Positions 14,846-64,000 of a stretch of 64,000 nt of DNA are shown one piece after another (within the stretch, counting starts at the first letter, position 1; each line of letters starts with the position of its first letter). The stretch lies in contig NW_026889805.1 in the NCBI RefSeq assembly GCF_033153115.1, positions 4,340,001-4,404,000 on the forward strand. Direction: 5' to 3'. The DNA comes from Saccostrea echinata. Its lineage: Eukaryota. A model generated the notes under the pieces. The model did not search any database. It saw only the letters and a list, made by a program, of their open reading frames with translations, and was not told the origin of the DNA. The position numbers and the translations under genes were made by a program.

Positions 14846-16291
14846 TCACTTATTGTGGACAACATCTAAATAATCATTGTCTTTTATTTCATGTTTTTCA
14901 ATTTCATTTAATGGACTCAAATATTTATCATTGCTTTCTTCGACGCATTCAGCATTTTGATTGGAACTATGACACGTTAAGCTAACCCCGTCCTCGTAAC
15001 TATGGATTGAATCCGAACTATGTACTACAGGCTCTATGATTTCAATATATGCATGCGTTTTTCCACTTGATTCTGGTTCTAGATATCCACCATTATTTCC
15101 CGTGGAGGAAGAGTTTTCGTCGTCAATTTCCCTATAATGGGAATAGTTTGTTTTCATTTCCTGATTTATTTTGGACTTAGGCTCTTCATACTTGGTACCG
15201 AGAGGTTGCGTCATTTCCTCCATTATTATGTTATAACGGTTTCCTGACACTTCGCCTTGATTTACCAGATTTCTATCTATATCAATTTCCTGATATTCGC
15301 CAGATTCGTTTCCTTCCTTAAAGTGTTTTGATTTATTATCGTTTCTATATGTTCTATTGTTATGCAGAACCCATAGTCTTCTCACAACAGCAAAAAGTAT
15401 AGCAATCAAAATTATTATAACAACAGCAGCAAAACCAACCACTATCAGTATAATGGTTAAAATGTTAGGCTGATCCTTTGTTTCTACAGTCGGTGGTTGT
15501 GATGATTTACTCTTTAATTCTGTAGTTAATCTACCTGTTGACCATGAAATCGGTAGTGTAGACGATGATACCTCAAACACTGATGTGACTGGTGATGATA
15601 TTATTGTAGACGATTTATAATTTTCAGATTCTGTAGATATCTCTGAAAAATAAATATGTACCGTGGTTTGTATCAATAATANNNNNNNNNNNNNNNNNNN
15701 NNNNNNNNNNNNNNNNNNNNNNNNNNNNNNNNNNNNNNNNNNNNNNNNNNNNNNNNNNNNNNNNNNNNNNNNNNNNNNNNNNNNNNNNNNNNNNNNNNNN
15801 NNNNNNNNNNNNNAGTAGACATTTTTATTGTCCATGCAAAGGATAAAAGGTTCTTTGGTATCTATTTTATTATTCAGAATTAAAAATTCAAAGATCAGTA
15901 CATGAGGATCCAAGCATATTGATCAGTAAGAAATAAAGGTTAATATGTTTATCTCTATTTTTGGGTGGTAATATATTATTGTATCCTTATACTTGTCTCC
16001 TTTTTCGATTGTTTGTTTTTTCCATGAAGATGAAGGCTGAATAGAAATTTGTTTTCATTCTCTTTTAGAACGGATCAAAAATATTATGATTTTTTATTAT
16101 GTCAGAGTATTTGTTTGTTTGTTTGTTTTTTTAAATTTAAGTTTCTGATTAGAATAAACGTATACCGTCAAGTATAGATGAATCTATTTCGACTGATATA
16201 CAGAAATTGTCATAACTACTTTAAACGTTTACTTTTTTGCATGAGTATAAATATATTTCATTAAATCAATTACCTTTACCATTTTTGTTGT

Positions 16292-16384
<93 letters not shown>

Positions 16385-17510
16385 CATTACTTTCAAAACA
16401 CTATCAGAAGTGATTTTCTTTTATTGTGATTTAATTTATGTTCGAAGGATTTCTTTCATTTTCCACATGTATTCGATCCCTTCAAGTCATTGAAATAAAT
16501 TTATTTTTCCTTAAATTAATAGCAGTTTCTCAGTTAGAAATATTGAATTTCTATGAAAATCAGATATTATACACTGCCTGGATCTTTGAGTCTATAATGT
16601 CCCTTTGTGTACTTTGTTTGAACTTGAGTGTCAAAAATCCTTGACATGACTTTTTAAAATTTCATAAAGTCACTCACCTACCCTTTACCAATACTTTTTT
16701 TTTTTTTTTAATTTTTTTTATGTACATTTAATAAACAAAATATACATATTGCATTGTCTTTGAATCAGAAAAAATAAATGCAGTTGGTTCGTAAATTAAT
16801 AACTTAAGGATATATTTGGAAAGGTAATGCCTCGAGAAAACTCAGCAATACATTATAGTCCCTTAGGAATGATTGCGCGTTACATACATGTACATTACAT
16901 TTTGTATTGTAAAATATAAGTGATTAACATCTAAGTTTTGTTTGCATACCATTCCAGTATCAATTCCAGGTACATAAATATAATAACCACCCCCTTTCTC
17001 TCTCTTTCTCGTAAGCATTTAATATGGTTATAAGAAGGAATTGGCATACCTTTACAGCCTGTGATCTTGTCGCAAACATGCAATGGAGGACATGTACAAT
17101 CTTCCGCACACAGTCGTCCATACGAACCAGATGGACATTCAACGCTACAATTCTTTCCAAAGCTCCCCGCAGGACACTCTAGGTAGAAAGATTCCTTATT
17201 TCTATACATAAAATTCCTCTGCAGTTCATTATTTTGGAAAGTTACCCTATTCTCGCATATAGAAAAACATTGTCTTCTAACTTTCGTTATATATTGTCAA
17301 TTTCATGTTAATAGTAGAAGATAATAAGCTTCTTTGGTAGTGGTAAACGAAATAAACTGCAAGTGTCCATATCTTACCTGCACAAGTCTTGTTTACGTCC
17401 AAAAAGTAATTTACAGGACAATTTGTTGTCCCACTACCTTCATCCGTTAAAGTCAAGTATCTATCGTTCAATAGAAAACAGTAAATCCATTTCATGATAT
17501 GTGTTTTCAT
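14846..17510 (-). CDS. Gene A: single-pass EGF-like (MEGF10/CED-1-like) receptor, ~352 aa. Exons 17510-17378, 17178-17050, 15642-14846
   Basis: Phase-1 GT-AG joins give ..NCPVNYFLDVNKTCA-ECPAGSFGKNCSVECPSGSYGRLCAEDCTCPPLHVCDKITGCK-S/T stalk-TM (ILTIILIVVGFAAVVIIILIAILFAVV)-tail with YQEI, YNII, YEEP, SHYREI, YLEP, YIEI, YLDV. An N gap lies in the last intron. Confidence 0.75.
16294..16380. repeat. (TA)n microsatellite in an intron of gene A
   Basis: Direct. Confidence 0.98.
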
Positions 17511-22184: not shown

Positions 22185-23276
22185 TGACTTTTCAACTTTG
22201 TACACAACCATTCCCCACGATAAATTAAAGTCCAGGCTTTTTGATATCATTGACAGCTGCTTTTTCAATAAAAATGGAACTCGTAAATTTACTTACCTTG
22301 TCATTGGTCATTTGCAAAATTATTTTGTTAAAAACATTCTGATTGTTCACACAAGTACTCTGAAGTTGACATTAAAAAGATGCTTGAGTTTCTGATTGAC
22401 AATATCTATGTAGTTTTCGGAGACCAGGCCTTCCAACAATCTATTGGAATTCCCATGGGTACCAATTGCGCCCCGTTATTAGCAAACCTTTTTTTATATT
22501 CATATGAAGCAGAATTTGTCCAAAATCTTATACGTGAAAAGAAGAAAACACTTGCTGTGGCCTTCAACTCGACATTTAGATATATCGACGACGTATTGTC
22601 AATTAACAATGGCTATTTCCATTCTTATGTCGATACGATATATCCTGGTGAACTTGAGATAAAAGATACCACAGAGTCTGACACATCTGTTTCATATTTG
22701 GATATTTTACTTGAAAAAGACGTTAATGGTAATCTAACAACCAAGCTTTACGATAAACGTGATGACTTTAACTTTTCAATCGTCAACTTCCCTTACTTAT
22801 GCAGCAATATACCTTCATCACCTGCATAGGGGGTATATATCTCTCAGTTGATTCGATACGCAAGAGCATGCTCTACGTATGGACAATTTCTAAAACGAGG
22901 TAAATTACTGACAAATAAGTTGATGAAACAAGAATATCAGCTATCTCGTTTAAAGTCATCATTTCGTAAGTTCTGTCGATACAATGACCTTGTCAGCAAA
23001 TACAATTTATCATTGAGTCAAATGCTGACTGACGTTTTTCACACTAATTGTTAGGCCATTATTTACACACTGAATTGTCGACGGATTTTTCCGTTATTTC
23101 CCGATCATGACAAGGAGCACACGGCGGGTGTGACCGGTCGGCAGGGGATGCTCACTCCTCCATGGCACCTGATCCCACCTCTGATGTTTGGAGGTCCGTG
23201 TTTGCTCTTCTCCTATTTTGTATTGATTAATGGACTTTTGAGCTTGAATACTGTTCGTTTTCTCCATATATTTCAT
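22185..23276 (+). mobile_element. 5'-truncated Penelope-like RT copy (frameshifts, stop)
   Basis: DFSTLYTTIPH..GIPMGTNCAPLLA..FRYIDD; full 3' tail; absent at the paralogous site ~32935. Confidence 0.9.
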
Positions 23277-24283
23277 TTCAATAAACAATTGTGAAAATAT
23301 TAAAGATATTCTGAAAACAATAGATGGAACACAAGTTTTACATCAATTTTATTTTATTTCATATTTATCCAATATATTTATCACATTTCAGTGTGTTCAT
23401 TATCGGTCGGTTCCCGTTGTTTTGTTTTTTATTTGGGGGGGGGATTAATTTTGGTGGAACAAGACAATACATTGTTTTAGTTCCCAATATGTTTATCTTC
23501 TCTAACCAATCTATTTTGTTTGAATAGGATCCCCCATCCTGATAATTATTTTTTTTAAGCATGAGCACGTCAATTTCACTTCAGATCTAAATATTCTCTG
23601 ATATTTCCGGTGGACGTAGAATTTTCCTTGTCAGTTTCGTAATAGATATTTTACATTTCCTTTTCTAGTTTTGACCTTTTTTATAAATACTTTGTTCTCC
23701 CGACATTGTCTATTATTCTATTATTATCCTCCTAAAGCTTAGATCTGATTCACCATCATTACGTTGATGTTGTTATCATTATACATTTCCGATCCACTCC
23801 ATTCCTTGACATTTATTGACTCATTTTCCTTTAAAAGTTTTCTTTAAAAAACTTATTTTTTTTAGCCATGCAAAAAACTAAGTTTGGAAACACACTATGT
23901 TCACCTACAGTTAAAAAAACAAACAAACAAATTTTACTCATCTCCCACACAGAAAAGTTTAATAGCTTTTTAATATTTCTTCCAAATGAAATAATTAGAA
24001 GATGTTTTAATTGTGTAAAATTAAAAATACGACTATACATTGGAACCGTAAATCACATTATCCTTTTACCAAATTATGTGGCTTGCTTAAACAGAAAGTT
24101 GTGTAACTAAACAGAAATCACTTCCATAGTGATGGAGATGCCTATTTTAGCAAAGACGTTTTGAATTTTGGAAGAAAAAAGTGTTATTTATCCTTTAGAA
24201 CAAGATCTAGTAAATGAAATGTGCCTATAGGATTCTCAAATCCTCAAATTTGAGATTTCCATTTTCCATTCCTTTTCAAATTA

Positions 24284-25391: not shown

Positions 25392-26443
25392 ATGAAATAT
25401 ATGGAGATAACGAACAGTATTCAAGCTCAAAAGTCCATTAAACATTACAAAATAAGTGCAGAGCAAACACGGACCTCCAAATCATCAGAGGTGGGATCAG
25501 GTGCCATGGAGGAGTAAACATTCCCTGCCCACCGGTCACACCCGCCGTGTGATCCTTGTCATGATCGGAAAATAACGGGAAAATCCGTCGACAATTCAGT
25601 GTGTAAATTATGGCCTAACAATTACTATGAAAAACGTTATTCAGGATTTGACTCAATGATAAATTGTATTTGCTGACAAGGTCATTGTATCGACCATAGA
25701 AATTACGAAATGATGACTTTAAACGAGACTGCTGAAATTCTTGTTTCATCAACTTGTTTGTCAATAATTTACCTCGTTTTAGAAATTGTACATACGTAGA
25801 GCATGCTTTTAGGTATCGATTCAACTGAGCGATATAAACCCCGTATGCAGGTGATGAAGGTATATTGCTGCATAAGTAAGGGAAGTTGACGATTGAAAAG
25901 TTAGTCATCAAGTTTATCATAAAGCTTGGTTGTTAGATTACCATTAACGTCTTTTTCAAGTAAAATATCCAAATATGAAACAGATGTGTCAGATTCTGTG
26001 GTATATTTTATCTCAAGCTCACCGGGATATATCGTATCGACATAAGAATGGAAATAACCATTGTTAATAGACAATACGTCGTCGATATATCTTAATGTCG
26101 AGTTGAAGACCACAGCAAGTGTTTTCTTCTTTTCACGAATAAGATTTTGGACAAATTCTGCTTCATATGAATTTGAAAAAAGGTCTGCTAATAACGAGGC
26201 GCCATTGGTACCCATGGGAATTCCAATAGATTGTTGGAAGACCTGGTCTCCAAAAACCACATAGATATTGTCAATCAGAAACTCAAGCATCTTTTTAATG
26301 TCAACTTCAGAGTACTTGTGTGTACAGTCATAATGTTTTTTAACAAAATAATTTTGCAAATGGCCAATGACAAGGTAAGTAAATTTACGAGTTCCATTTT
26401 TATTGAAAAAGCAGATGTTAATGATATCAAAAAGGCTGGATTT
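25392..26443 (-). mobile_element. 5'-truncated Penelope-like RT copy (frameshifted)
   Basis: ORFs 25901-26461 and 25615-25920; absent from the duplicate at ~34640. Confidence 0.9.
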
Positions 26444-26569
26444 TGATAGTTTTAAGACCAAAAAAGGCAGTATGAACTCATACCTTTGTCATTACATCTT
26501 TACCTTAAAAGTCAGTCTTAAGTGATGTGAGAGAATTTCATGACTTCAAGCAGGATTTCTTTATTAATT

Positions 26570-42434: not shown

Positions 42435-43668
42435 TATTCTGCTACGGTGAATATTTAAACTTCTTTATATAGAATTACAAAAACTTTATTTGGACGTCAT
42501 CATTTCATCATTTAGTAACTGTTTTTCTTATGGGTGTAGTTTTACAATAAGCAGTAAAAAAAGGTTGTTTGCCCCGACACACTTTTTCCATCCCCACCCC
42601 CTCCTCGGATCATCTCAAACTGATCTTTGTTATCAAAGCGAGAGATTCTTCAATGTACATTACATGATGTTCATTGCCAATATTTATAGACAGTCAATGT
42701 GATTCAGAAACACATGACATGATGTTCATTGCTAATATTTACAGACAGTCAATGTGATTCAGAAACACAGAACTTGAATGCTTCGACAAACGAACAGGAA
42801 TTTTATAATTTATCACATTGTTTTGTAGAAAATTCAATACCTATTTTAATCATAAAATGTGCCCTCAATATTCTAAAACAAGGAAAATATTTTCAGATTA
42901 TTACTTTTTATTTAATTAACTAAAGAAACCTCTATACACTACACACACAAAAGATTTATAATTCTGTGGTAATTTTATGCAGATAAAGCAATCTGCCCTT
43001 TGATCTAAACTAAAATAAAAATAAAAATAAATTAAAATTTACAATGTATTATTCAATTTGTTATCAAATCAAGTATTCCTAACATTTTTATTTGTCTAAA
43101 TGAATTGATAAAACACTTCATTTTGATGTATATTCCCACACTTAAGCATGCAACGAAGATTTCTCTTCATCAGATACTTCATTCTCTTTGAGACATTGAA
43201 ACATTTTTCCTGAGGGTAAATGCTAGATACCCACTGGTGAAAATATAAAAGCTTATCTTAATATATACTAAGAAATACATTTTTATGCTTTATACACTAT
43301 ATAATGTTCTCAATGGCCAGAAACATTTTCCTTTAGTATCTAGAAGGCCCTTAACCTCCAATTGTCTAAAGAGTGTTCATTAAATTTCACTGATTATCAA
43401 ATAAACGATCTTGTCAAATGCTCTAGACTCAAACATGAAAATTTGAGCTATGCCGCATTTGTTCAACGTGTGTGACAAAAACTCCACCTTAAGAAGTGCA
43501 TTCTGCAGAGATTTTAGACAAGAATTTAGAAAGTTAGTAAAAATGTTCATAACATTTTGTTAAATGTTTTGTTTGAGTCATTTTCCATTAACAATTATCT
43601 GTCATACTTTTAAAATATGACAAAGTGAAAATAAAAATAAAATGTAATAAAAAAGAAAGGTAGAGTAC

Positions 43669-45077
43669 CTCTACAGCCTTTGATTCTGTCGCATCTGTCG
43701 GGGGAACATTGACAAGATTTTGCGCACAATTTCCCATATGTGTTGTTTGGACATTTCTTACTGCAATTCCATCCAAATGTTCCTGGAGAGCACTCTAATA
43801 AGAAATACTTCACTTTTCATGTGAATTAAAAAAAGAAATCATATACTAGCATGATTTCACAATTTTTTTTTAAACTAATTGTTAGGGCATTATTTATAAA
43901 CTGAACTGACTAAGGATTTTTCCATTTTTTTCCCGATCATGACAAGGAGCACACGGCGGGTGTGACCGGTCGGCAGGGGATGCTCACTCCTCCATGGCAC
44001 CTGATCCCACCTCTAAATTTTGAGGTCCGTGTTTGCTGTGCTCCAAATTTGTATCGTTTCATTGAACTCTCGATATTGAATATTGTTCCTTATCTTCATA
44101 TTTCATTCTTTCTTATTGTTTAGTGTCTCCTTTTTTACAAACACTGGTGCTTAGTTTTCTTTCGTGTTACTACTAAGCGTTAAAAACTCCTAAAGGCTGT
44201 TAATAAATAAAATTATTGATTGATTGTTTGTTTGTTGTTTTACGTCCCGTGCGAGAATTTTTCACTCAATTTGAGATTTCACCATTTATACCGGTGAAGG
44301 GCTTCAAACTTAGACCTTTACTCGGCGATCAGGGCCATTTAGCAGTGAGGGTTCTTTATTGTGCCAACGCCTGTCGTCACACTGTGCTTTGGATTTTAAG
44401 GTCTAAGCTGAAGGACCCGCAACTTTCACTTTAAAGTACAGAACGCTTGGCGAGAAGCAGCCGCAACCTTTTTTATTGACTTAGGTCAGTCTCAGCCGTG
44501 GTTTGAACCCACGACCTTTCGATCACGGAGCGAGCGCTCTAACGACTGAGCTACCGTGTGACGGTTAAAAGGATATGGCTTTCAGAGGCGGAAAATTCTT
44601 TATATTGACATTACAGTATTGATCTGTTCTGTTATCAAATACAGATATATAAATTGTGGATACTTCCCCACGTGATCAAACAGTGGAATTTCTTTGTTTT
44701 AATATCTGAAACAGCAAAATACATGCTCATGAGTTGGAAATGTAACGATCAGAATTTGATACTTCTCTCAATCGCTGTTGACAATACATGTACCTTACCT
44801 GAAGCGTAATATAGTATTTGAATAACAGAATTTGAGATATGCTATATGCACTGAATTTATGTCTTGAAGTTGATATACATTTAAAATTTATCTACGTCCA
44901 ATCAAATATCAACTTACCTTTACAAATCCTGTCAAAATCCAAAAAATAATTGACACAGCACAGTTTTTGAGGGTATGTTTGGTGATAGCATCCTGTATCG
45001 TTTATTTCTTTTGTCACATTCCTGCAGGACCAAACAATTGTTATGAAATAAATCCATTTTAAGTCGTGAAACTTCAT
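43669..45077 (-). CDS. Gene D: divergent family member, first two exons (45077-44918, 43794-43669); 3' exon not identified
   Basis: MKFHDLKWIYFITIVWSC (signal-like)..GC..LCCVNYFLDFDRICK-ECSPGTFGWNCSKKCPNNTYGKLCAKSCQCSPDRCDRIKGCR; phase-1 GT-AG. Confidence 0.65.
43845..44107 (+). mobile_element. PLE 3'-end fragment in the gene D intron
   Basis: ..AAACTAATTGTTAG followed by the conserved tail. Confidence 0.8.
44213..44566 (-). mobile_element. tRNA-derived SINE in the gene D intron
   Basis: Reverse complement has TAGCTCAGTCG, GGTTCAAACC and the same body and tail. Confidence 0.8.
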
Positions 45078-48159: not shown

Positions 48160-49677
48160 TTACAAAACATTCACAACATCTAAATATTCATTATTTGCCG
48201 ACTCGTGTGTTTTTGGATCATTGCGTTTTGTGGAGCAAGTCTTGTTACAACGTGCTAGGTTCCCAGTATCTTGATACTCCTCTAGTTCATCTAGATCTGA
48301 TTTGTTTGAAGAACTTCTCCCATCCTTATCATCATTTAAGGAATTAGATTTATGAATCAAAGGTTCTATAACTTCTATGTATGCATGAACTCGTCCACTT
48401 GATTCCGGTTCTAAATATTCTCCGTCTTTTCCGGTTGTATTTTCCTTATCAATTTCATGATCGGTTTGTTTTATTTCCTCTTCTATTTTTGACCCTATGT
48501 GTAAATATTTTGGTCGTATTATATCATCCTTTATTCTATTATAACGATTGTCAGGCATCTCATTCGCTATCATTTCGTCTAGGTTTATTTCATGATACAC
48601 TTCCAATTCATTTCCTTCCTTAAAATGTCTTGATTCATTTTCTTTTTTGGGATATTTTTTCTTAGAACGACTAGAAAACAATTTTTTGGCTATTGTCGAA
48701 AGTATTATTAGAAAAAGAAAAGCAATCACTCCTCCCATTATTATTATTATTAGCGTATTATTATTGGCCTCTTCTTTTGTTGCTATCGTCGGTTCTGGGG
48801 AAGAATCCTTACTTGTTACCTTTGTAGTTGATTCTGTTGTTCGTCTAGAAGTTGCCTTAATTGGCTCAGACGACTCAACAGAGGTTGCGAGAGATATGAA
48901 CGTTGACGTTTGAATTGTTGTTTCTGGAAGTAATCAGAAAATCAGAGAGGGTCAAAATTAGTCTTTTTAAATACCAATGGTCTTTGAGAAAAAAATTCTA
49001 CCTTCAATTTTTTATAGATTGCACACCTTTTTATATTTATGTTAATTTTTTAAAGTAGCATTTAAATAGAATGTGCGTATGTCTTAAGTATCATGCTTGT
49101 TTTAAGTTGTATTTTTTAAGACATTAACTTTTCATATACCTTTAATAACACAGCCAAATGCTCGGTCACAGTAAAAATCAGATGTACATTTACACTTTTT
49201 TCCACATAGTTTTCCATAAGAACCAGAAGGACAAGTCTGTGTGCAGTTGTCACCAAAGTATCCAAGCTCGCATGCTGAAAACAAAGACTGCATATATTAC
49301 AATTCTACAAATACTCAGTGTTATAATACACCAATACAAAATATCTCGGATATGTGAAAATTGATTAAAATTTAATCATTCGTTTTCATTTAAAAAAAAA
49401 CAACTCTTCTACAATATAAATTATACAACTATAGGAAATGGAAAAATAATTAGAACAATCTTAGTAACAAGTGATCACACTTACGCAAACAACTATTCTC
49501 AGCTTCACTCCAGTAATGGCTAGTGCAACATTTTTTGTCATTTGATCTAAAGGTAAATAATAGAATTTACTACCAATACAGACAATTAACATTGATGCGG
49601 TAAGGGATAGGTAAGTTGAAACATAAGATGAAACTTACCTACCGCAATCGGCAGGTGTCATTATTTCCAGACGACAT
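48160..49677 (-). CDS. Gene E: single-pass EGF-like receptor with ITAM, ~331 aa. Exons 49677-49643, 49546-49485, 49274-49140, 48923-48160
   Basis: MSSGNNDTCRLRSNDKKCCTSHYWSEAENSCLPCELGYFGDNCTQTCPSGSYGKLCGKKCKCTSDFYCDRAFGCVIK-stalk-TM-tail containing DNRYNRIKDDIIRPKYLHI; exon sizes and phases identical to gene F; start codon uncertain. Confidence 0.8.
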
Positions 49678-49918
49678 ACATTTCATCAAGTTATAGCAGG
49701 AGACATATACGGCGTTGTAGTGTTAAAATAACGATTCCTATATTTATTTTTAGCACTACAAATAGATTTGGTGGATCTAGTTTGTAAATATAAATACCTC
49801 ATATTGGTGTGCGAGTTAGCTAAGCGGTTTTCCTCAAACTCTTGTTCCTGGATTTTATAGTGTCTCTTAAAAATAAAAAAAAAATAACAAACGAAAACAA
49901 ACGAAAGTTTGAGAAAAC

Positions 49919-50063
49919 TGATTACTAACGAGTACTGGTGATTACTAACGAGTACTGATTGATTACTAACGAGTAATGGTTGATAACTAACGAGGACTGG
50001 TTGATTACTAACGAGTACTGGTGTGATACTAACGAGTACTGGTTGATTACTAACGCGTACTAG
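49919..50063. repeat. 21-bp minisatellite (TGATTACTAACGAGTACTGGT), about 7 copies, upstream of gene E
   Basis: Direct periodicity. Confidence 0.9.
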
Positions 50064-50397
50064 TTATGGGACCTGTTTATCCAATTATACAAACATTGAT
50101 TTACATGTATATGTTTTGGTGTAATAAACATGCCACTGATTAAATTGCATATCCCGATAGTATATGTCCCTAGTAATATACCTCGATGATCCGTGGAAAT
50201 AACATAACAAGGAAAAAAAAATCGCTGATGTTTCCGAACATACTCTGTACCTACATTTTTGCGACCATAAGTATGAACTTTGGAGAGAAGACCTTAGAAA
50301 AGCAGCCAATTAGAATCGTCGTAGGTACGCAGTATATTTAAGGCGCCAAGTGGAAATATTGCCAATTTTTATGACAGATTAGTTGATGTTATAGGAT

Positions 50398-50750
50398 TTC
50401 AGCAACCTCGTTTATTGTCAGCTTTTCGTAAATTCTATGGTCGTTATAATATACTTATAACATAAGTATAACATAACCTATCAATGAGTCTTATTTTGGC
50501 TAACATGCTTTATACCAATTTTAGGCCTTTGTTTTTATAGTTAATTTGACTATGGAATGTAACGTCTACTTGTTCAATACATAAGGCTAACAGCAGGTGT
50601 GACCGGTCAACAGGGAATGCCTACTCCCCCGAGACACCTGATCCCACCTCTGGAATCTCCGGGGGTCCGTATTTATACCCTGTTCACAGATTTGCATTTT
50701 TGTATATTTTTTTAGATCAATCACTGTTCGTTATCTTTACCTTTTTCACT
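50398..50750 (+). mobile_element. 3' fragment of a diverged PLE subfamily
   Basis: FRKFYGRYN remnant and variant tail CAGGTGTGACCGGTCAACAGGGAATGCC..ACACCTGATCCCACCTCTGG. Confidence 0.7.
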
Positions 50751-51727
50751 ATGATAAAAAATACATTCTTAATCAGACGGCGATTCTTTTAGTATTTTGC
50801 TAAAATCAGACAGATGTAATCATGATTATTCACTATATGTTGAGGACTGTTAGATCGAAATTTTCTATTTAGACTTGTTACGTGATGTGGCAGTGACCTG
50901 AATTTAGCACATTAACTTGCAGTATTGAGGTCACCTATAAATTTCAGTAGTTCAAGGGCATAACCAAGTTAAACTTCTAAAGTTTAGTTAATGTTTTTAA
51001 ATATCTACAATCCCATTGTAGTTTGTGAAAAGTGCTGCGACCCTATATAGATTCCACTATTTCATTGTTAAAATCATAATTGTATGACCGCATGCTGAAT
51101 TTTTGCTGGTCAACTGCAATGAATATAGAAATGATTAATTCATTTTCAAGATTTCAACAGGATCGCAGCACTTTTCAAATAGCTTAATATCTCTAGCGAA
51201 GATAACAGTATGCCATTGCACTAGATCGATTTATTAAGAACCTTAGATCATCCTTCAATGTACATGCATACAAATATGCAGCAGTATCATTTAACTGAAA
51301 ATGTACAGAAAATATATGACCAAAATCATAAATATGACGTTGCACCCAAGTTAATGACTCCATAAATAGTTGCAAATAATATTTCTTTCAATTATAAAAT
51401 ATATTTTTCGTTGTGAAATATTACTTGATTTGATCTCACTGCATACACACTGCTTCGTTTTACGAAATGACGTCTCATCGTTGCAGTGCGATTAGCGATT
51501 TGTTTATACCTTGATTTGTACATGTGCGACTAAAATAACAACAAAACAGAATATAATGTTAGTAATTTTTAGTGTAGTTTAATGCACTTCTACAGTTCAG
51601 TTTAAAATTACAAAATCATTTCATTTTGTGGTATTCGTAAGGATTGTTAGTGTCGCATGATGTCAGAGTTAATATTTCCAATATCAATTTGGCTCCGCCT
51701 CCTTTTTGTAGCCGTAACTGTGCTCTG

Positions 51728-52280
51728 TGAAATATATGGAGATAAGAACATTATTCAAGCTCAAAAGTCCATTCAAACAATACAAATCAGGAGCAAACGC
51801 TGACCTCCAAAACATCAGAAGTGGGATCAGGTGCCATGGAGGAGTGAGCATCCCCTGCCGACCGTTCACATCCGCCTTGTGCTCTTTGTTATGATCGTTA
51901 AATAACGGAAAAATCCGTCAACAATTCAGTTTGTAAATAAGGCCTAACAATTAGTATGAAAAAAAAATCATTTAGCATTTGACTTAATGATAGATTGTAT
52001 TTGCCGACAAGGTCACTGTATCGACCATAGAACTTACGAAATGACAACTTTAAACGAGACTGTTGATATTCTTATTCATCAACTTGTTTGTCAATAGCTT
52101 ACCTCGTTTTAGAAATTGTTCATACGTAGAGCATGCTCTTGCGTATCGAATCAACTGAGATATATACACCCCATATGCAGAAGGTAGTGTCTATTACTGC
52201 ATAAATAATGGAAGTTGACGAAGTTATAGTCATCAAGTTTATCATAAAGCTTGGTTGTTAGATTACCATTAACGTCTTTA
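51728..52280 (-). mobile_element. 5'-truncated PLE copy
   Basis: KDVNGNLTTKLYDK through to the 3' tail. Confidence 0.85.
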
Positions 52281-54942
52281 ACTTTCGTCCAAACATAGGT
52301 CGTGACGTTTATGCAATTGTTCAGGAATTGTGATTCTTTTCTTTTGAATTTTAAAATTTTGTTTAAAGCAGAAATTTTACAGTGCATTTGCTTTTTAGTT
52401 AATAACGGAGGTAACTATGTCACATATTCTAGAGTAATCGCAGAATTGGTATTTATAGACTAGTTTCCAACCATAATCATGATCCATACTTCTCAAGAAG
52501 TTATAAAAACTTCGGGCAGTCCTTTTTTGAAGTTTTTCATCATATTTGTCGTTTTTCAAGCGCCTTTTTCATGGGATGACCACTTCGAATATCCTTGAAC
52601 CATTCTTTTGCCAGATATAAACCAATGTCTGAGACTCGTTTATGTCATTTCATCGTTTCGAGCTCTTCTTCCTACGGACAGGAGTTATTCCCCCACTTAA
52701 AAAAGGTATTGAATGATTATTTGGTGTGCTGCATTATCACCAGTTTTTTGGCAATATTTTTGGCCATTTTTGGCAATTTCCATGGAAATTGTGCATTTAA
52801 CGCCATATTTATATTATTGCCATCTATAATGTCAAACTTATGAATTTTAACACATTAGTACCTAAGATCATAGGGATTTTGTCGAGGTAAATTTTATCAC
52901 ATTATATTTCAGTATTATCTGGTAATAAACAAAACATCGCTGACGATGCTTTTCTTAAAAAGTGAAAAAATAGCGGTGCGCCGATTAGCTATATTTCACA
53001 TCCTTTATATACTATTTAGATTCATATGCCATTACAAACTCATAATACTATCTCAAAATAACAAAAATATCATTTGCAACCATTGTACAAAAAATTAATA
53101 AGTTTGGTCAGTTAATTTAGAAGGTATTTAAAAATCCTCGTATATTAAGCATCTTTACTTCGTGCATTTCTTTTCCCCTACTGATTCAAAAAATAAGTAG
53201 AGGAAAGTACCCATTTAACGCCCCAGGGTGGGGCTAAATCGGTTAAATATTCAATCGCATATTGTATTTTTTTTATAGTGTATATTTAAGGAATTGTAAA
53301 TTTAGATTTTAAAAATGTAGACAAGTAGATTTAAATTACACGAGGCCTTACATGTCAATTTCAATAGTCCCCGCCCACTGACGTCAAACACAATGGCAGC
53401 CGCACGAGAATTACATGCATATAAGACCTCCTTAGCGTCAGACACAAAGACAGCCGCACGAGAATTACATGCATATTAGGCCTTCTTAGCTCCTGACCTT
53501 TCGCTTGGCGAAATTTGCATTCCGGTAAAATGATCAAGAAATCAACTCAACTAACTTTCAAAGAGTTATCAAAGAGAAAACAAATAGAAATGGAAATATT
53601 TGAAATTTATCTTTGATAATAGCTATTACTTTAACAGACTCTTCGAATGATGGTCCTTCCCTTTTCCTCTTTTACTAAATTGTTTTGTTTTTTCCCAAAG
53701 GTGTAGTTCCCGAGAAGGAGTAGTTCAATTGAACATTTATTTAAAATGCATTATATCCTTACTTCTGAGCAAGGAGACAAAGTTTATTCATTGTAATTAT
53801 AAACAGAATTAATATCAACAGTCTCGTTTAAAGTCGTCATTTTAACTTTATTAAAAAAAAAAATTAGTCAAAGAAAATCACATGAATACAGAGTCCTACT
53901 CCAAGATGGAACTGATTGTTCATCGACTGAGATACTCAGGTACCTTCATGCCTCTAGGCCTCTACATACATTATTAATGAATTGGTTTTTATTATTTTTT
54001 TCTTTTTTGATAAGCTAAAATCATTGTTTCTGAAAAACATAAACACACTGATCATCAAAAACGTCTTTGACGTAAGCAGCATCCAATTCGATGGTAAACA
54101 ATGGTGCTGTCCTGTTGATAACTAGTTTGAATTTTTACACTAATCATAAGGCCATGAGTATAGTCCTCCAAGCTGTATCATCCGACTTTCATGCTACTAT
54201 TCATTGCTGGAAAATATCTGAAATCCATCTAAATTTGTCATACATTTAAAAATTTTAAGCCTTCAATCTTTCAAAAGGTTTCAATGATTTTCCCTATACA
54301 TTTATACGTTTACATTATAGCCTCATCCCTGCGTAAGAGTAAATGGTTTGGGAAAAAGTCGATTTAATATTACTCGAGAATGTTGGGACATGTATTTGCT
54401 ACATGTATGTAGCCTAGAATGAAATGTTCAAACATTTTTTGTCAACATTTCTTGCTTTTAAACTATTAACTCCTTCAATGATAAAATTCTTGCATCAGGC
54501 TCATGTCTCTAGCAAACTTATTGTATAATGCATGACAATGCCTGCAGATAAATTAAAGAAGTTGTAGCGCTCCAAAAGGAGATATTTCTTGCAACATTTT
54601 TACTTAAAACTTTGAACAACCTCTTTGGCTTCATCCTTGCCAGATGGGGCCATGGTTTAAAAAAAATTGAAACGTAGTTCTTTTTTCTATGCTACAGTTT
54701 CTATTTCAAATATTAAAATTGCATGTTAATTCATTTTCATTGCAATTTCCTCGCACAACTTAAGCACATCACATATGGTAAACACTTGAAAATCGAAATG
54801 TCGGGAAAATTGTTGATAAGTTCCATATTCAATTAGCAATGAGTAGGCGTGAGATATTGTGTAAGATTTAAAATAAATACATATATATGTAACTAGATAC
54901 AACACGGAATTTTATATCAATTTTATTTTCCTTTCAAATTAA

Positions 54943-56503
54943 TTATAACACATTGACAACATCTAAATATTCGTTATTTGTCGATTCATGTGTTTTTGGA
55001 TCATTGATTTCGGTGGAAGAGGACTTGTCACTCTGTTCAAAATTCACAGTATCTTGATACTCCTCCAGTTTATCTGACTTGTTTGAGGAACTTCCCTCAT
55101 CTTTGTCAGTATTTAAAGAATCAGAGTTATGTATCAAAGGTTCTATAACGTCTATGTATGCATGAACTCGTCCACTTGACTCCGGTTCTAAATACTCTCC
55201 ATTATTTCCGGTTGAAGTTGAGTTTTCCTTATCAATTTCATGATAGGTTTGTTTTATTTCCTTTTCTATTTTTGAACCTATTTGTAAATACTTTGGTCGC
55301 ACTATATCGTCCATTATTCTATTGTAACGATTGTCGGGCACCTCAATCTCATTCACCATCATTTCGTCCATGTTGATTTCATGATACATTTCCGATTCAT
55401 TTCCTTCCTTAATATTTTTTAGTTCTTTTTCCTTTTTGGAATATTTTCTCTTTGAACGTTTAGAACAAAATTTCTTAATCACTGCTAAGATTATTATTAG
55501 AATTAGAAAGGCTATTACTGCTCCCATTAATAATACAATGGTGTTATTATTTGTCTCATTATTATTTGTCTCTTTCTTTGTTGGCATAGTTGGTAATACT
55601 GATGATTGCTTTATTGTTATCTCTTCAGATGAAACAGTTGTTATCCAAACCGGTATCAAAGTTGTTTTGTTTCGTTCAGACGACGTGGCAGAAGTTGACA
55701 GTTTTATTGACCTTGAGGTTTGAATTGTTGTTTCTGGAAGTAAAGAGCAGAATGGGTTCAGATATCTTCTAGATCTTTATCAATACATCTTAAAACATAC
55801 TAGTATAATTTGTTTTAATTATTAGAATGCAAATTGTCTCATAATTATATTATATAGTATTCAAAGTCTAAATGAAGTATTCAGTTGTCATGTCTATTTA
55901 AAGTTGTACTTTCTCGATAAAATAAATAATTATTAGTACCTTTAGTAACACAACCAAACACTCTGTCACAGTAATAACCAGGCAGACAGTTACACACTTT
56001 TCCACACAGTTTTCCATACTGACCCGGAGGACAAGTGTGAGTACAGTTATCACCAAAGTATCCAATCTCACAGGCTGAAAATGAAGAATAATTGTCTGAA
56101 TTCTTTATAATTCCTCAATGTTGTATCAATACAAATACTTTCCTGGATGTTTGGCAATTGAAAAAATTCAATTATTTCTTTACAATTATGAATAATTGCA
56201 CCTACTCAAGGAAAAACAATCATAATAAATCATTTGGTTTCCATTACGAAAAAAGGAATAAAATAAACATAAGTAAACGAAGAAAAATATAATTATGACT
56301 ATAATGCTAGCATCAGACTTACGCAAACAATCATTCTCATCATCACTCCAGTAATAGTTGGCGCAGCATACTTTGTCATCTAAACTAAAAATAAATAAAT
56401 AAAATTACCTTTAAATTTCAACAACTAGTATTACTGTAATATTGGAATATTAGCTGAAACATACCTACCGCAATCTGCAGGGTTCATTATTTCCAGATGA
56501 CAT
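54943..56503 (-). CDS. Gene F: single-pass EGF-like receptor with ITAM, ~340 aa. Exons 56503-56469, 56384-56323, 56074-55940, 55733-54943
   Basis: MSSGNNEPCRLRLDDKVCCANYYWSDDENDCLPCEIGYFGDNCTHTCPPGQYGKLCGKVCNCLPGYYCDRVFGCVTK-stalk-TM-tail containing DNRYNRIMDDIVRPKYLQI and ending EYLDVVNVL. Confidence 0.8.
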
Positions 56504-58199: not shown

Positions 58200-59274
58200 T
58201 CGAGGTTTCAGGTTTCACCCGAACATGATCGCGGCACAGGAAGGAAGAACATGAAACAGGTGCATACCTATTTAATAATCTTTCCACCGGTAAACGAACC
58301 TTCACCACTGATTCTTTTTATTCATATTTTTGAATGATTATTATAATTATTTTATTTTTGTTTTTCAGCCACAATTAAAATCCAAAACCGGCAGTCTGAT
58401 TGTATGAGAACTTTTGTACAAAAGCAGACACACATATAATATTCATGTGTACACACTATGGACATAATGATATGAAAGGATTCAATATGCTATCATTTAC
58501 TGTACCTTTTTCATAATTTCCCATGCTTAAGATCATTCTTTTTTTTTTTTGGGGGGGGGGGTAGTCTTTTTATCTTTCTGAACGTAAGAGCATAGCTGTG
58601 AAATGTTTAAAGATCAAAACTATTTGAAAGAAAAAGCTTCATAAGAGCATTTGTATGTTATGATTTGTATTCCATCATCTGTCATTTATTTGTATTAAAA
58701 CAAACTATGATTTTAAATTTTAGATTTTAAACGTACAGATGTTTAAAATTAAGTCCATTCTCTTGATTATTTACTTTCAACAGACTGCAGAATATGTCTC
58801 ATTTTAAAAGTATTTTAAGAATAAAAAAGATAGAGACAGAAGATTTAAAAAAAAAAAAAAGATAAATAATGACAAAGTTCAAAGTATCAAGTTGCCTAAA
58901 ATTATCGTTAATGGAAAGAATGAAGGAGAGACAGGTTCCTCACATAACCATTTCATATTTACCCTTTGACATTCTTTCCAAAATAATTTTAAAAGCTTTT
59001 TGATAATATAAAAAGTGATAAAATGATCTGAAATTTCAAATATTTACTAGCATTTCAATGCCAAATTAGATAAAAATGCTGGACATTTTATCGTAATGAT
59101 TAAACAAAATTATTGATTTTGAAATTAAATTTTTCTTGTGGAAACATTTTCACCGCCTACGTGCGTCGTGCATTTCGAGAAAATATTTCAACCCTTTCAG
59201 CTTATTTTTTTATGCCTGCACCAATTTAAACTTTTTGGCATATATCATCTCTGGACGAAAAGAGGAACTGCGCA

Positions 59275-60773
59275 TCGTTATTAGCAGACCTTTTTTGTAT
59301 TCATATGAAGCAGAATTTGTCCAAAATCTTAAACGTGAAAAGAAGAAAACACTTGACGTGGCCTTCAACTCGACATTTAGATATATCGACGACGTATTGT
59401 CAATTAACAATGGTTAATGCCATTCTTATGTCGATACGATATATCCCGGTGAGCTTGAGATAAAAGATACCACAGAGTCTAACACATCTGTTTCATATTT
59501 GGATATTTTACTTGAAAAAGACGTTAATGGCAATCTAACAACCAAGCTTTATGATAAACGTGATGACTTTAACTTTTCAATCGTTAAGAACTGCGAACGA
59601 TAGTATTGTTCTCCCGCCTACCCCCAAGACAATTTTCAAAAGTTAACATATTTAAATGATTTTCATATTAATATAGATATTTATATAAATTTTCATAAAA
59701 CATTACTTATTTGGGAAAACAAAGAGAGATAACTCTATAATTTTGGTAAAACTTGTGTTTTTCACTATAGAAATCAATGGAAAACGGAAAATATTTTTAA
59801 AACATCTTTCTCCCACCGTGAAACAAACATTCCTTTTTACAGGTAATATGGATTGTTATTTAACAAATTCATACCAAAGCATTTTGTGTTTCAAGGGGGG
59901 GGGGGCATATGTTTACAGTCAAAAAACGACAAAAATACTCATTTTTTCACCAATTTTGAAGGGTTTACAACTTAAACGTCGTATTTTATTAATTACATAT
60001 GTTAAATTTTATATGCCTAAAACATAAGGAAAGATTCAAAGAACATTTATCCATATCCAAGAATATTTTAAAATATGCTCAAGCTTTCAAGTCTGATTTC
60101 AATTGAAAACATCGTCTACCCCCCTTATTAAAAGAGCTGGAATTAAGAGTAATTAACTGTTTAACACTGGTATTTAAATTATCAATCAATTACCATTGAA
60201 CTCTTATTTGCATTTAACAAAGGTTTTTTGGCCAAATTGCCATTAGTATTGAATAAAATGGGTGTAAAATGTAGGCGGGAATCGAGAGTTAGCGTGCGTA
60301 GTTCTTCCCTTACTTATGCAGCAATATATCTTCATCACTTGTATACCGGTTTTATATCTTTCAGTTGATTCGATACGCAAGAGCATGCTCTATGTATGTA
60401 CTATTTCTAAAACGAGGTAAATTATTGACAAACAAGCTGATGAAACAAGAATATCAGCAGTCTAGTTTATAGTCATCATTTCGTAAGTTCTATGGTCGAT
60501 ACAATGACCTTGCCAGCAAATACAATTTATCATTGAGTCAAATGCTGACTGACGTTTTTCATACTAATTGTTAGGCTATTATTTACACACTGAATTGTCG
60601 ACGGATTTTTTTCGTTATTTCCCGATCATGAAAAGGAGCACACGGCGGGTGTGACCGGTCGGCAGGATATGCTCACTCGATGTTTTGGAGGTCCGTGTTT
60701 GCTCTGCTCCTATTTTGTATTGTTTAATGGACTTTTGAGCTTGAATACTGTTCGTTATCTCCATATATTTCAT
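59275..60773 (+). mobile_element. 5'-truncated PLE copy interrupted by a TIR element
   Basis: FLYSYEAEF..FRYIDD..FNFSIV, then an insertion, then FPYLCSNI..3' tail. Confidence 0.85.
59586..60306. mobile_element. Non-autonomous TIR DNA transposon nested in the PLE
   Basis: AAGAACTGCGAACGATA..CCCGCCTAC / GTAGGCGGG..TAGCGTGCGTAGTTCTT; RT sequence resumes after it. Confidence 0.7.
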
Positions 60774-63814: not shown

Positions 63815-64000
63815 AATATGAAGATAACGAACAACAATCAAGATCAAAAGTCCAATGAAACCTTACAGATTGGGAGCAAAGCAAACAAGGACCTCTAAAA
63901 CATCAGAAGTGGGATCGTGTGCAGTGAAGGAATAAGCATCCCCTATGAACCGGACACATCCGCTGTGTGCTCCTTGTCATGATCGGGCAAACGGAAAAAT
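63815..64000 (-). mobile_element. PLE 3' tail running off the window
   Basis: Reverse complement matches the conserved tail. Confidence 0.8.

What the first reader, a model, noticed from the sequence alone, without database searches (positions are those of the whole stretch)
48496..55335. Consensus ITAM in genes E and F
Seen: DNRYNRI-x8-YLHI (48496-48552) and DNRYNRI-x8-YLQI (55279-55335) fit D/E-xx-YxxI/L-x6-8-YxxI/L exactly. Both Tyr, both Ile and the spacing are kept while the stalks have diverged strongly. Other conserved sites are YHEI, YLEP (YxxP), YI(E/D)V and the terminal EYLDVV. Inference: docking for a tandem-SH2 kinase (Syk/Shark type).
Basis: partly seen in the sequence, partly recalled or inferred. 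Interest (0 to 1): 0.75.

Follow-up and report, generated by a model that had tools for sequence, protein, structure and literature searches.

The report
ITAM-like tails of oyster EGF receptors
Two neighbouring rock-oyster genes encode small membrane proteins whose inner tails carry a conserved pair of tyrosine motifs of the kind immune receptors use to recruit Syk-type kinases; the motif is real and under selection, but its function is so far only predicted.

Summary
On the minus strand, E (48496-48552) reads DNRYNRI-x8-YLHI and F (55279-55335) reads DNRYNRI-x8-YLQI. Both lie in the disordered cytoplasmic tail of single-pass proteins built as one MEGF/SREC-type EGF module, a Ser/Thr stalk, a TM segment and a Tyr-rich tail.

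The genome is probably Saccostrea echinata. The family is tiny and, as far as found, restricted to oysters: six intact tails here, plus relatives in S. cucullata and Ostrea edulis.

- **Conservation:** the YxxI pair is kept in 11 of 13 tails (4 of 5 lineages).
- **Spacing:** the spacer is 8, 9 or 11 residues. The "consensus" x8 form belongs to one Saccostrea clade only.
- **Exception:** gene A and its orthologue carry YEEP instead of the second motif.
- **Selection:** tails are under purifying selection (dN/dS 0.22-0.34), and Tyr makes up 5 of the 15 invariant columns.
- **Readers:** the genome has a Syk-like and a Shark-like tandem-SH2 kinase locus.

An ITAM reading is therefore plausible (about 0.45) but untested. 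A general multi-SH2 docking scaffold is the main rival. E and F lack a signal peptide.

The scan has already noted ITAM-like tails on other EGF receptors elsewhere in this genome (s1-803080, s1-803137). This is a new member of a known kind.

The parts
48496..48552 (-). Gene E ITAM-like pair: DNRYNRI-x8-YLHI (first YxxI 48532-48543, second 48496-48507)
55279..55335 (-). Gene F ITAM-like pair: DNRYNRI-x8-YLQI (first YxxI 55315-55326, second 55279-55290). A third YHEI at 55234-55245 gives an overlapping YLQI-x11-YHEI match.
48160..48923 (-). Gene E last coding exon: Ser/Thr stalk, TM segment (about 48688-48753), 175-aa Tyr-rich cytoplasmic tail, stop at 48160-48162. Other conserved Tyr motifs: YHEI 48586-48597, YLEP 48406-48417, YIEV 48370-48381, YQDT 48265-48276, YLDV 48175-48186.
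   Evidence: (AG acceptor read in the DNA)
54943..55733 (-). Gene F last coding exon: stalk with three NxS/T sites, TM segment 55477-55539, 177-aa tail. Other conserved Tyr motifs: YHEI 55375-55386, YLEP 55183-55194, YIDV 55147-55158, YQDT 55048-55059, YLDV 54958-54969. The exon start is placed by analogy with E.
49140..49274 (-). Gene E EGF-like exon (C-x2-G-x-F-G-x2-C-x3-C-x4-Y-G-x2-C-x3-C-x-C...), MEGF/SREC/Tie2 type
49485..49546 (-). Gene E small exon encoding ..KKCCTSHYWSEAENSCL (CC..Y(W/F)..C..C lead-in to the EGF module)
49643..49686 (-). Gene E first coding exon (MKCMSSGNNDTCRLR; alternative donor 4 nt further on). There is no AG acceptor in the open stretch and an in-frame stop just upstream, so there is no signal peptide.
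55941..56078 (-). Gene F EGF-like exon (approximate limits taken from tblastn)
14846..15680 (-). Gene A last exon. It is the same tail family, with GNRYNII-x11-YEEP (second motif not YxxI). An N run interrupts the exon's 5' part.
23389..23831 (-). Broken tail copy (gene B): stops and frame shifts, the first Tyr codon is gone, and the second motif reads YL*K
33253..33460 (-). Broken tail fragment (gene C): stops, and the motif region reads DNNRII..PKYLQK

Best explanation
E and F are functional members of a small oyster gene family. Each protein is a single-pass membrane protein. Outside the cell it has one MEGF/SREC-type EGF module on a glycosylated Ser/Thr stalk. Inside it has a disordered tail of about 175 residues with six to nine tyrosines in conserved short motifs.

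Most likely mechanism (inferred, not shown):
1. Ligand-driven clustering lets a Src-family kinase phosphorylate the tail. The invariant Y-x-E-I site resembles the recalled Src-SH2 optimum pYEEI.
2. The doubly phosphorylated YxxI-x8-YxxI pair then acts as an ITAM. It docks the two SH2 domains of a Syk-like or Shark-like kinase encoded in the same genome.
3. The remaining conserved tyrosines (YLEP, YIEV, YLDV) dock further SH2 proteins, as in Draper.

Shown: the motif, its conservation, purifying selection, the inferred topology, and the presence of candidate reader kinases. Inferred: phosphorylation, bidentate binding, and any immune or engulfment role.
For: - **Motif:** present in both genes. 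The strict form is expected in only about 0.3% of composition-matched shuffles.
- **Family-wide conservation:** both Tyr and the first Ile are invariant in 10 of 10 aligned tails, and the second Ile is kept in 8 of 10. With three more tails, 11 of 13 keep Yxx[I]-x8/9/11-YxxI. These cover 4 of 5 lineages on the tree, including the deepest split P0007/P0012.
- **Spacer behaviour:** the spacer varies in sequence and length while the flanking Y/I are fixed, as expected for an ITAM.
- **Selection:** tail dN/dS is 0.22-0.34, with dS 0.43-0.51 among E/F/G, so these are not recent copies.
- **Tyr bias:** Tyr makes up 5 of 15 invariant columns out of 177 (Fisher p=2.3e-4).
- **+3 position:** 5-6 of the 8-12 Tyr per tail have I/L/V at +3 (P 0.0005-0.04).
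- **Neutral decay:** the two unconstrained pseudogene copies have lost the first Tyr and the second Ile.
- **Disorder:** the tail is predicted disordered (pLDDT 54, pTM 0.13).
- **Topology:** there are about 8 positive charges just after the TM segment, and NxS/T sites plus a Cys-rich EGF module before it.
- **Readers in this genome:** the C37 locus has two separate SH2 N-halves followed by Tyr-kinase exons. The C47 locus has SH2-Ank-SH2 followed by Tyr-kinase exons.
- **Precedents (passages read):** C. gigas CgIgR has a classical ITAM and co-immunoprecipitates with CgSyk (PMC6994640). Draper's ITAM is defined as YxxI/L-x6-12-YxxI/L and binds the Shark tandem SH2 directly, and other Tyr also matter (10.1101/198986). 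Jedi-1 ITAM Tyr pairs 923/941 and 1004/1016 bind Syk (PMC4055271). In E and F the two Tyr are 12 residues apart.
Against: - There is no biochemical or genetic evidence.
- Expression is unverified.
- Spacing is not fixed across the family (8, 9, 11). The canonical x6-8 form with acidic -3 is limited to one clade.
- Gene A and its S. cucullata orthologue stably carry YEEP instead of the second YxxI while keeping all other motifs. The rest of the tail therefore works without the pair.
- The second Tyr is preceded by basic R-P-K, not by acidic residues.
- Four other tyrosines are as conserved as the pair, so conservation does not single out ITAM function.
- E and F, and the NCBI models of their relatives, have no signal peptide. 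Surface display therefore needs type III insertion of an N-terminal part of about 140 residues.
- The tail has no detectable homology to any characterised ITAM-bearing protein: 5 hits in 1.84 billion representatives, all uncharacterised oyster proteins.
Confidence: 0.45

Rival explanations
1. The tail is a general phosphotyrosine docking scaffold. Each conserved pY motif (YxEI, YNxI, YLxI, YLEP, YIEV, YLDV) independently binds a single-SH2 or PTB protein, such as a Src-family kinase, Crk/Nck-type adaptors at YxxP, or SHP-type phosphatases at Y[IV]xV. This would resemble transmembrane adaptor proteins. The ITAM-like spacing would then be incidental to a dense array of YxxI sites.
For: - Five Tyr columns are invariant and a sixth nearly so, and the pair is not more conserved than the others.
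- The spacer varies between 8, 9 and 11.
- The A clade swaps the second site to YEEP and keeps it in two species.
- F, the L002 copy and P0001 also give an overlapping YLxI-x11-Y(H/N)EI match, showing how easily pairs arise in such an array.
- The relaxed pattern arises in 3-7% of shuffles.
- Many single-SH2 genes are present (49 SH2 exon matches).
Against: - The pair survives in the deepest-branching clade (P0007/P0012), where most of the surrounding sequence has changed (32% identity). The spacer there still lies within 6-12.
- In Draper, both a true ITAM and additional functional Tyr coexist (10.1101/198986), so the two readings are not exclusive.
Confidence: 0.3
2. The Yxx(I/L/V) sites are tyrosine-based sorting signals (YxxO, read by clathrin-adaptor mu subunits; recalled knowledge). 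They would drive endocytosis or lysosomal delivery of a scavenger-type receptor, with no phosphotyrosine signalling.
For: - There is an excess of I/L/V at Tyr+3.
- The ectodomain profile resembles the EGF repeats of scavenger receptor class F member 1 (E=0.005) and Tie2 (E=5e-5).
Against: - One sorting signal suffices, whereas here five to six Tyr sites are conserved. They include YLEP (Pro at +3), which does not fit YxxO.
- The invariant Glu at +2 of YxEI and the fixed pairing are not explained.
Confidence: 0.1
3. There is no function. The match is a by-product of an AT-rich, Tyr/Ile/Asn/Lys-rich coding sequence and of recent tandem duplication, and E and F may be decaying copies that lost their signal-peptide exon.
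For: - The genome is 33% G+C.
- E and F tails are 74% identical.
- Two neighbouring copies are clearly dead.
- E and F have no signal peptide.
- Expression is unverified.
Against: - dN/dS is 0.22-0.34, with dS about 0.45 between E, F and G.
- The reading frames and splice sites of E are intact.
- The motif is conserved across Saccostrea and Ostrea.
- NCBI models of relatives in three species also start without a signal peptide, so this is a family trait and not decay of E/F.
- The strict motif appears in about 0.3% of shuffles.
Confidence: 0.05

Closest known systems
Draper-I (Drosophila; CED-1/MEGF10 family)
   Same: A single-pass receptor with MEGF-type EGF modules outside. Its Tyr-rich tail has a YxxI/L-x6-12-YxxI/L pair that recruits a tandem-SH2 kinase (Shark), plus further functional tyrosines (10.1101/198986 and PMC4503800, passages read). 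NCBI's automatic name for the O. edulis relative P0013 is 'protein draper-like'. Language-model features place EMI+EGF_PEAR1L clusters at 0.84-0.85, which is a lead only.
   Different: - There is one EGF module instead of many.
- There is no EMI domain hit.
- The E/F tail has no NPxY.
- E and F have no signal peptide.
- The tail has no detectable sequence homology to anything outside oysters.
Jedi-1 (PEAR1/MEGF12) and MEGF10 (mammals)
   Same: These are EGF-repeat engulfment receptors whose ITAM tyrosines bind Syk. One Jedi-1 pair (Y1004/Y1016) has its Tyr 12 residues apart, as in E and F (PMC4055271, passages read).
   Different: They are large multi-EGF ectodomains with EMI and NPxY/GULP coupling. 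No sequence homology of the tails was detected.
CgIgR of Crassostrea gigas
   Same: An oyster single-pass receptor with a 'classical ITAM' in its tail that co-immunoprecipitates with CgSyk (two SH2 domains plus a kinase) and drives ERK activation (PMC6994640, passages read). It shows that the ITAM-Syk axis operates in oysters.
   Different: It has five Ig domains outside rather than an EGF module. It belongs to an unrelated family and did not appear in the tail profile search.
Scavenger receptor class F member 1 (SCARF1/SREC-I) and Tie2 EGF repeats
   Same: The ectodomain profile of the family aligns to these EGF-like repeats (Tie2 E=4.8e-5; SCARF1 E=0.0046-0.0078).
   Different: The similarity covers only the 45-60-residue Cys framework. 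The cytoplasmic parts are unrelated.
F-type-lectin/EGF receptors with ITAM-like tails in the same genome (scan notes s1-803080, s1-803137)
   Same: These are tandem families of single-pass EGF-containing receptors with ITAM-like Tyr tails in this oyster. They are AI notes that I did not verify.
   Different: Their tails were not hit by the tail profile in the whole-genome search (8 matches, all from the present family), so they are not detectably the same tail family.

Membership tests
Canonical ITAM ([DE]xxYxx[LI]-x6-8-Yxx[LI]) | Two Yxx[LI] motifs in one cytoplasmic tail | tested here: met
   E has YNRI and YLHI. F has YNRI and YLQI. They lie C-terminal to the TM segment, on the side that carries about 8 positive charges.
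Canonical ITAM ([DE]xxYxx[LI]-x6-8-Yxx[LI]) | Spacer of 6-8 residues, conserved in relatives | tested here: inconclusive
   The spacer is x8 in E, F, the L002 copy and S. cucullata P0001. It is x11 in the L004 copy and four O. edulis tails, and x9 in P0007/P0012. All lie within the x6-12 range used for Draper (10.1101/198986).
Canonical ITAM ([DE]xxYxx[LI]-x6-8-Yxx[LI]) | Acidic residue 2-3 positions before the first Tyr | tested here: inconclusive
   D at -3 is found only in the x8 clade. The other clades have G, A or K.
Canonical ITAM ([DE]xxYxx[LI]-x6-8-Yxx[LI]) | Phosphorylation by a Src-family kinase and phospho-dependent binding of a tandem-SH2 kinase | not testable with these tools
   Only the presence of Syk-like (C37) and Shark-like (C47) loci in the genome was shown.
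Draper/CED-1/MEGF10/Jedi engulfment receptors | N-terminal EMI domain | tested here: not met
   The Pfam scan of P0001 and of the window's exons gave no EMI hit at E<=1.
Draper/CED-1/MEGF10/Jedi engulfment receptors | Array of many MEGF-type EGF repeats | tested here: not met
   There is a single Cys-rich module of about 60 residues per protein. It resembles Tie2/SCARF1 EGF repeats.
Draper/CED-1/MEGF10/Jedi engulfment receptors | NPxY motif in the tail (CED-6/GULP site) | tested here: not met
   The E and F tails have no NPxY. A D/NPVY motif occurs only in an alternative tail exon of O. edulis P0013/P0005.
Draper/CED-1/MEGF10/Jedi engulfment receptors | Detectable sequence homology of the protein | tested here: not met
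   The tail profile against 1.84 billion representatives gave 5 hits, all uncharacterised oyster proteins. Atlas feature similarity to MEGF10/EMI clusters is only 0.82-0.87, below the 0.9 level the tool calls more than a lead.
Type I cell-surface receptor | Cleavable N-terminal signal peptide | tested here: not met
   The first coding exon of E has an in-frame stop upstream and no AG acceptor. F has only one AG, two codons before the end. The NCBI isoforms of the orthologue start MSSGNN.. or MNPADC... Only the gene A type has a hydrophobic exon 1, MKTHIMKWIYCFLL...

The most novel reading that the evidence does not exclude
The cluster may be a set of 'retuned' paralogous receptors.
- The ancestral tail carried a Draper-like long-spaced pair (YxxI-x11-YxxI). 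This fits a Shark-type kinase, whose SH2 domains are separated by ankyrin repeats.
- A three-residue deletion in one Saccostrea clade (E, F, the L002 copy) produced a canonical short-spaced, acid-preceded ITAM that fits Syk.
- The A clade converted the second site to YxxP.

One tandem locus would then couple the same kind of ectodomain to different kinases or adaptors. That would be an invertebrate analogue of paired immune receptors, built on a signal-peptide-less mini-Draper scaffold.
Probability: 0.1. Interest if true: 0.7.

Novelty: new member of a known kind. Interest (0 to 1): 0.4.

Why it matters
ITAM-to-Syk/Shark signalling predates adaptive immunity, but few invertebrate receptors that use it are known. 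In oysters, only an Ig-type receptor was found in the papers I read. This family would add a compact, lineage-restricted, tandemly duplicated EGF-type receptor set with natural variants: spacer 8, 9 or 11, and second site YxxI or YxxP. Those variants amount to a ready-made mutational series for testing how spacing selects between Syk-like and Shark-like kinases. It would also bear on oyster haemocyte biology and disease resistance. If the tail turns out to be only a general SH2 scaffold or a sorting tail, the finding is an ordinary uncharacterised membrane protein family.

Tried and rejected
- **Plus-strand reading of the coordinates:** gives stops. Rejected.
- **Pfam on the tail exon, the EGF exon and P0001:** nothing above the cut-offs, only TM-driven weak hits. 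A weak DUF7299 match (17 bits against a cut-off of 27) lies over the motif region. Not used.
- **phmmer of P0004 against PDB sequences:** only SCARF1 at E=0.23. A profile of five ectodomains did better.
- **First protein search with F's last exon:** 1 hit among 547 candidates.
- **Profile search of the 90% clusters:** 5 hits among 4,227 candidates, and it missed P0001 and P0004. That tool is therefore not exhaustive here. The absence of Crassostrea members is tentative and rests mainly.
- **Best tandem-SH2 locus (C9):** it proved to be Csk-like, with SH3, SH2 and kinase and a duplicated SH2 exon, not Syk. The C54 tandem-SH2 locus showed no kinase signature in the 10 kb fetched and was not pursued. 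The C36, C17 and C30 loci showed only one SH2.
- **Expression and splicing from reads:** not obtained.
- **ITIM/ITSM reading of the other tyrosines:** I compared E and F by eye with the recalled consensus [SIVL]xYxx[IVL] / TxYxx[VI]. None of the sites has the required -2 residue. Not pursued.
- **Structure:** folding the tail gave no folded domain, so no fold search was run.
- **Not in print:** a search for draper + ITAM + bivalve returned 0 papers. The search for ITAM + oyster + Syk returned 20 papers, none on this family by title or abstract among the 15 listed. Supplementary files were not opened and could hold gene lists that include these loci.
- **Spliced model:** exons were searched one by one (tail exon, EGF exon). 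The joined protein was not built or searched.

Full report
**1. Observation**

The two stretches read as stops on the plus strand. On the minus strand they read DNRYNRIKDDIIRPKYLHI at 48496-48552 and DNRYNRIMDDIVRPKYLQI at 55279-55335. They lie in long minus-strand ORFs, 48160-48738 and 54943-55659. These ORFs are the last coding exons of two paralogues.

The E and F tails are 74% identical (121/164).

In 20,000 shuffles per tail, the strict pattern [DE]xxYxx[IL]-x6-8-Yxx[IL] arose in 0.25-0.34% of shuffles for E, F and the L002 copy. The relaxed Yxx[IL]-x6-12-Yxx[IL] arose in 3.1-3.7%, and in 6.7% for the L004 copy.

**2. Gene structure**

The window is 33% G+C, with three N runs, and is clearly eukaryotic. 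In the DNA of E I read the following canonical splice sites on the minus strand:

- a first coding exon 49643-49686 (MKCMSSGNNDTCRLR), with a second donor 4 nt further on;
- a 62-nt exon 49485-49546 (..KKCCTSHYWSEAENSCL);
- an EGF-like exon 49140-49274;
- a last exon from 48923 encoding a Ser/Thr stalk, a TM segment and the tail.

F has the same EGF exon and last exon. E and F share 71% DNA identity over 1.7 kb, then diverge into repeats.

The first coding exon cannot be extended upstream. In E there is an in-frame stop and no AG at all in the open stretch. In F the only AG lies two codons before the end. So E and F have no signal peptide.

NCBI's three isoform models of the S. cucullata orthologue start at the same exon (MSSGNNEPC.., MNPADCG..). 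The O. edulis and S. echinata relatives also start without a hydrophobic N-terminus.

The charge distribution argues for N-terminus out and C-terminus in. There are about eight Lys/Arg right after the TM segment, and NxS/T sites plus a disulfide-rich module before it. By inference the protein is inserted as a type III membrane protein. The precedent of neuregulin-1 is recalled, not checked.

**3. The family**

- In the window's own 923-Mb assembly, the F tail finds five intact tails and two broken fragments, all within this one cluster.
- The five-tail profile adds one more tail 10 Mb away on the same contig.
- That sixth tail is 176/176 identical to NCBI's S. echinata LOC133173879 (P0007). 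The genome is therefore very probably Saccostrea echinata.
- Against 1.84 billion representative proteins, the tail profile finds only five. All are uncharacterised proteins of S. cucullata, O. edulis and S. echinata.
- A profile search of the 90% clusters adds P0012 (S. cucullata) and P0013, a short O. edulis protein that NCBI calls 'draper-like'. P0013 shares the ectodomain but has a different tail.
- Pfam gives nothing above cut-off.
- A profile of five ectodomains matches the EGF repeats of Tie2 (E=4.8e-5) and SCARF1 (E=0.005).
- The language-model atlas places the protein next to unnamed short molluscan clusters (0.95). Molluscan 'MEGF10' and arthropod EMI+EGF_PEAR1L clusters follow at 0.82-0.87, which is a lead only.

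**4. Conservation of the motif**

In a 10-sequence alignment, 15 of 177 tail columns are invariant. Five of these are Tyr (Fisher p=2.3e-4):

- the Tyr of YxEI;
- both Tyr of the pair;
- the Tyr of Y[IVL]E[VI];
- the Tyr of the terminal YLDV.

The Tyr of YL(E/D)P is kept in 9 of 10. The first Ile of the pair is invariant, and the second is Ile in 8 of 10.

With three further tails the counts are as follows:

| Tails | Pair and spacer |
|---|---|
| E, F, L002 copy, P0001 | x8 |
| L004 copy, P0005, P0006, P0009, P0010 | x11 |
| P0007, P0012 | x9 |
| Gene A, P0004 | x11, but YEEP as the second site |

That makes 11 of 13 tails, or 4 of 5 lineages on the maximum-likelihood tree. Three O. edulis tails (P0005, P0009, P0010) are more than 90% identical and are not independent. 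The x8 form with Asp at -3 is therefore derived and confined to one Saccostrea clade. The YEEP state is shared by two species, so it is a stable alternative and not decay.

The two dead copies in the window (about 23.4-23.8 kb and 33.25-33.46 kb) have stops. They have lost the first Tyr codon and the second Ile.

**5. Selection and structure**

- Nei-Gojobori dN/dS of the tails is 0.22-0.34 for all ten pairs. dS is 0.43-0.51 among E, F and the L002 copy.
- The stalks are less constrained: dN/dS 0.38-0.58, with 54-64% identity.
- Of the 8-12 Tyr in each tail, 5-6 have I/L/V at +3 (binomial P 0.0005-0.04).
- AlphaFold2 with the 10-row alignment gives mean pLDDT 54 and pTM 0.13. The only element is a low-confidence helix at residues 62-80.

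The tail is therefore a disordered carrier of linear motifs.

**6. Candidate readers**

An SH2 scan of the genome gave 49 exon matches, and a Tyr-kinase scan gave 145.

- The best tandem-SH2 locus (C9) is Csk-like, with SH3, SH2 and kinase and a duplicated SH2 exon.
- The C37 locus has two separate SH2 N-terminal halves 1.4 kb apart, with kinase exons about 8 kb downstream on the same strand. This is the Syk layout.
- The C47 locus has SH2, ankyrin repeat and SH2, followed by kinase exons. This is the Shark layout.

These are exon-level layouts, not full gene models.

**7. Literature (passages read unless stated)**

- In C. gigas, CgIgR has a classical ITAM and co-immunoprecipitates with CgSyk, which has two SH2 domains plus TyrKc (PMC6994640).
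- Draper's tail has an ITAM written YxxI/L-x6-12-YxxI/L, an NPxY motif and ten other Tyr. The Shark tandem SH2 binds the ITAM directly, and non-ITAM Tyr are also functional (bioRxiv 10.1101/198986).
- Draper-I ITAM-Src42A-Shark signalling drives macrophage wound responses (PMC4503800).
- Jedi-1 ITAM tyrosines 923/941 and 1004/1016 are where Syk binds (PMC4055271).
- SYK and SHARK homologues in invertebrates are summarised in PMC13344425.
- No paper in the library holds draper + ITAM + bivalve.

**8. Verdict**

The pair behaves like a selected signalling element, the cell has the kinases to read it, and EGF-type receptors with ITAMs are an established kind.

The data do not discriminate an ITAM from a general multi-SH2 scaffold. 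The family's variable spacing, the YEEP clade, the basic context of the second Tyr and the missing signal peptide are all real caveats. Membership in the Draper/MEGF10 family fails on EMI, repeat number, NPxY and sequence homology, so the claim is 'works like', not 'is a'.

Expression was not checked. I left the stretch out of every later search and masked it in scripts.

The scan has noted ITAM-like tails on other EGF receptors of this genome (s1-803080, s1-803137). The tail profile did not hit those loci, so the theme recurs but the tails are not detectably the same family.

Noticed in passing
window 29098-29349 (-) and L008 9269-9547 (-): There is an alternative stalk-TM exon similar to the C-terminal half of O. 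edulis P0013 ('draper-like', tail with a D/NPVY motif). One copy lies in the gene B region and ends in a stop. The other lies just downstream of the Tyr-tail exon of the L004 copy. The O. edulis model P0005 reads from the Tyr tail into such an exon. This may mean alternative tails, as in the Draper isoforms, or it may be a fused gene model.
   Followed up: partly
window 17388-17510, 30351-30479, 40406-40534, 44928-45077 (-): Genes A, B, C and D have a hydrophobic first exon (MKTHIMKWIYCFLL.. / MKFHDLKWIYFITIVW..) that E and F lack. B and C are pseudogenes: their tails are broken, and C's EGF exon has lost Cys residues. D has exon 1 and an EGF exon (43664-43798), but no tail of this family was found for it.
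   Followed up: partly
window 51728-52279, 59266-60520, 22464-23000, 63816-64000: Repeat copies with 77-95% DNA identity are shared between the E, F and A intergenic or intronic regions. The same places hold reverse-transcriptase-like ORFs, for example 25901-26461. This is probably the Penelope-like element of note s1-803665.
   Followed up: no
G000:C9:42767844-42778000 (L010, L013): This is a Csk-like gene (SH3, SH2, Tyr kinase) with two full-length, similar SH2 exons 4.7 kb apart on the same strand. They could be mutually exclusive alternative exons or an internal duplication.
   Followed up: partly
G000:C37:3721878-3731611 (+) and G000:C47:2110888-2123037 (-): A Syk-like locus (two SH2, then Tyr-kinase exons) and a Shark-like locus (SH2-Ank-SH2, then Tyr-kinase exons) coexist in this oyster genome.
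   Followed up: partly
P0010 (O. edulis LOC125680950): This is the one family member that has lost the otherwise invariant terminal Tyr (..SDTDLDVVH).
   Followed up: no
window 16229-16413: There is a long (TA/TATA-type) microsatellite that reads as YIYIYI.. in two frames.
   Followed up: no
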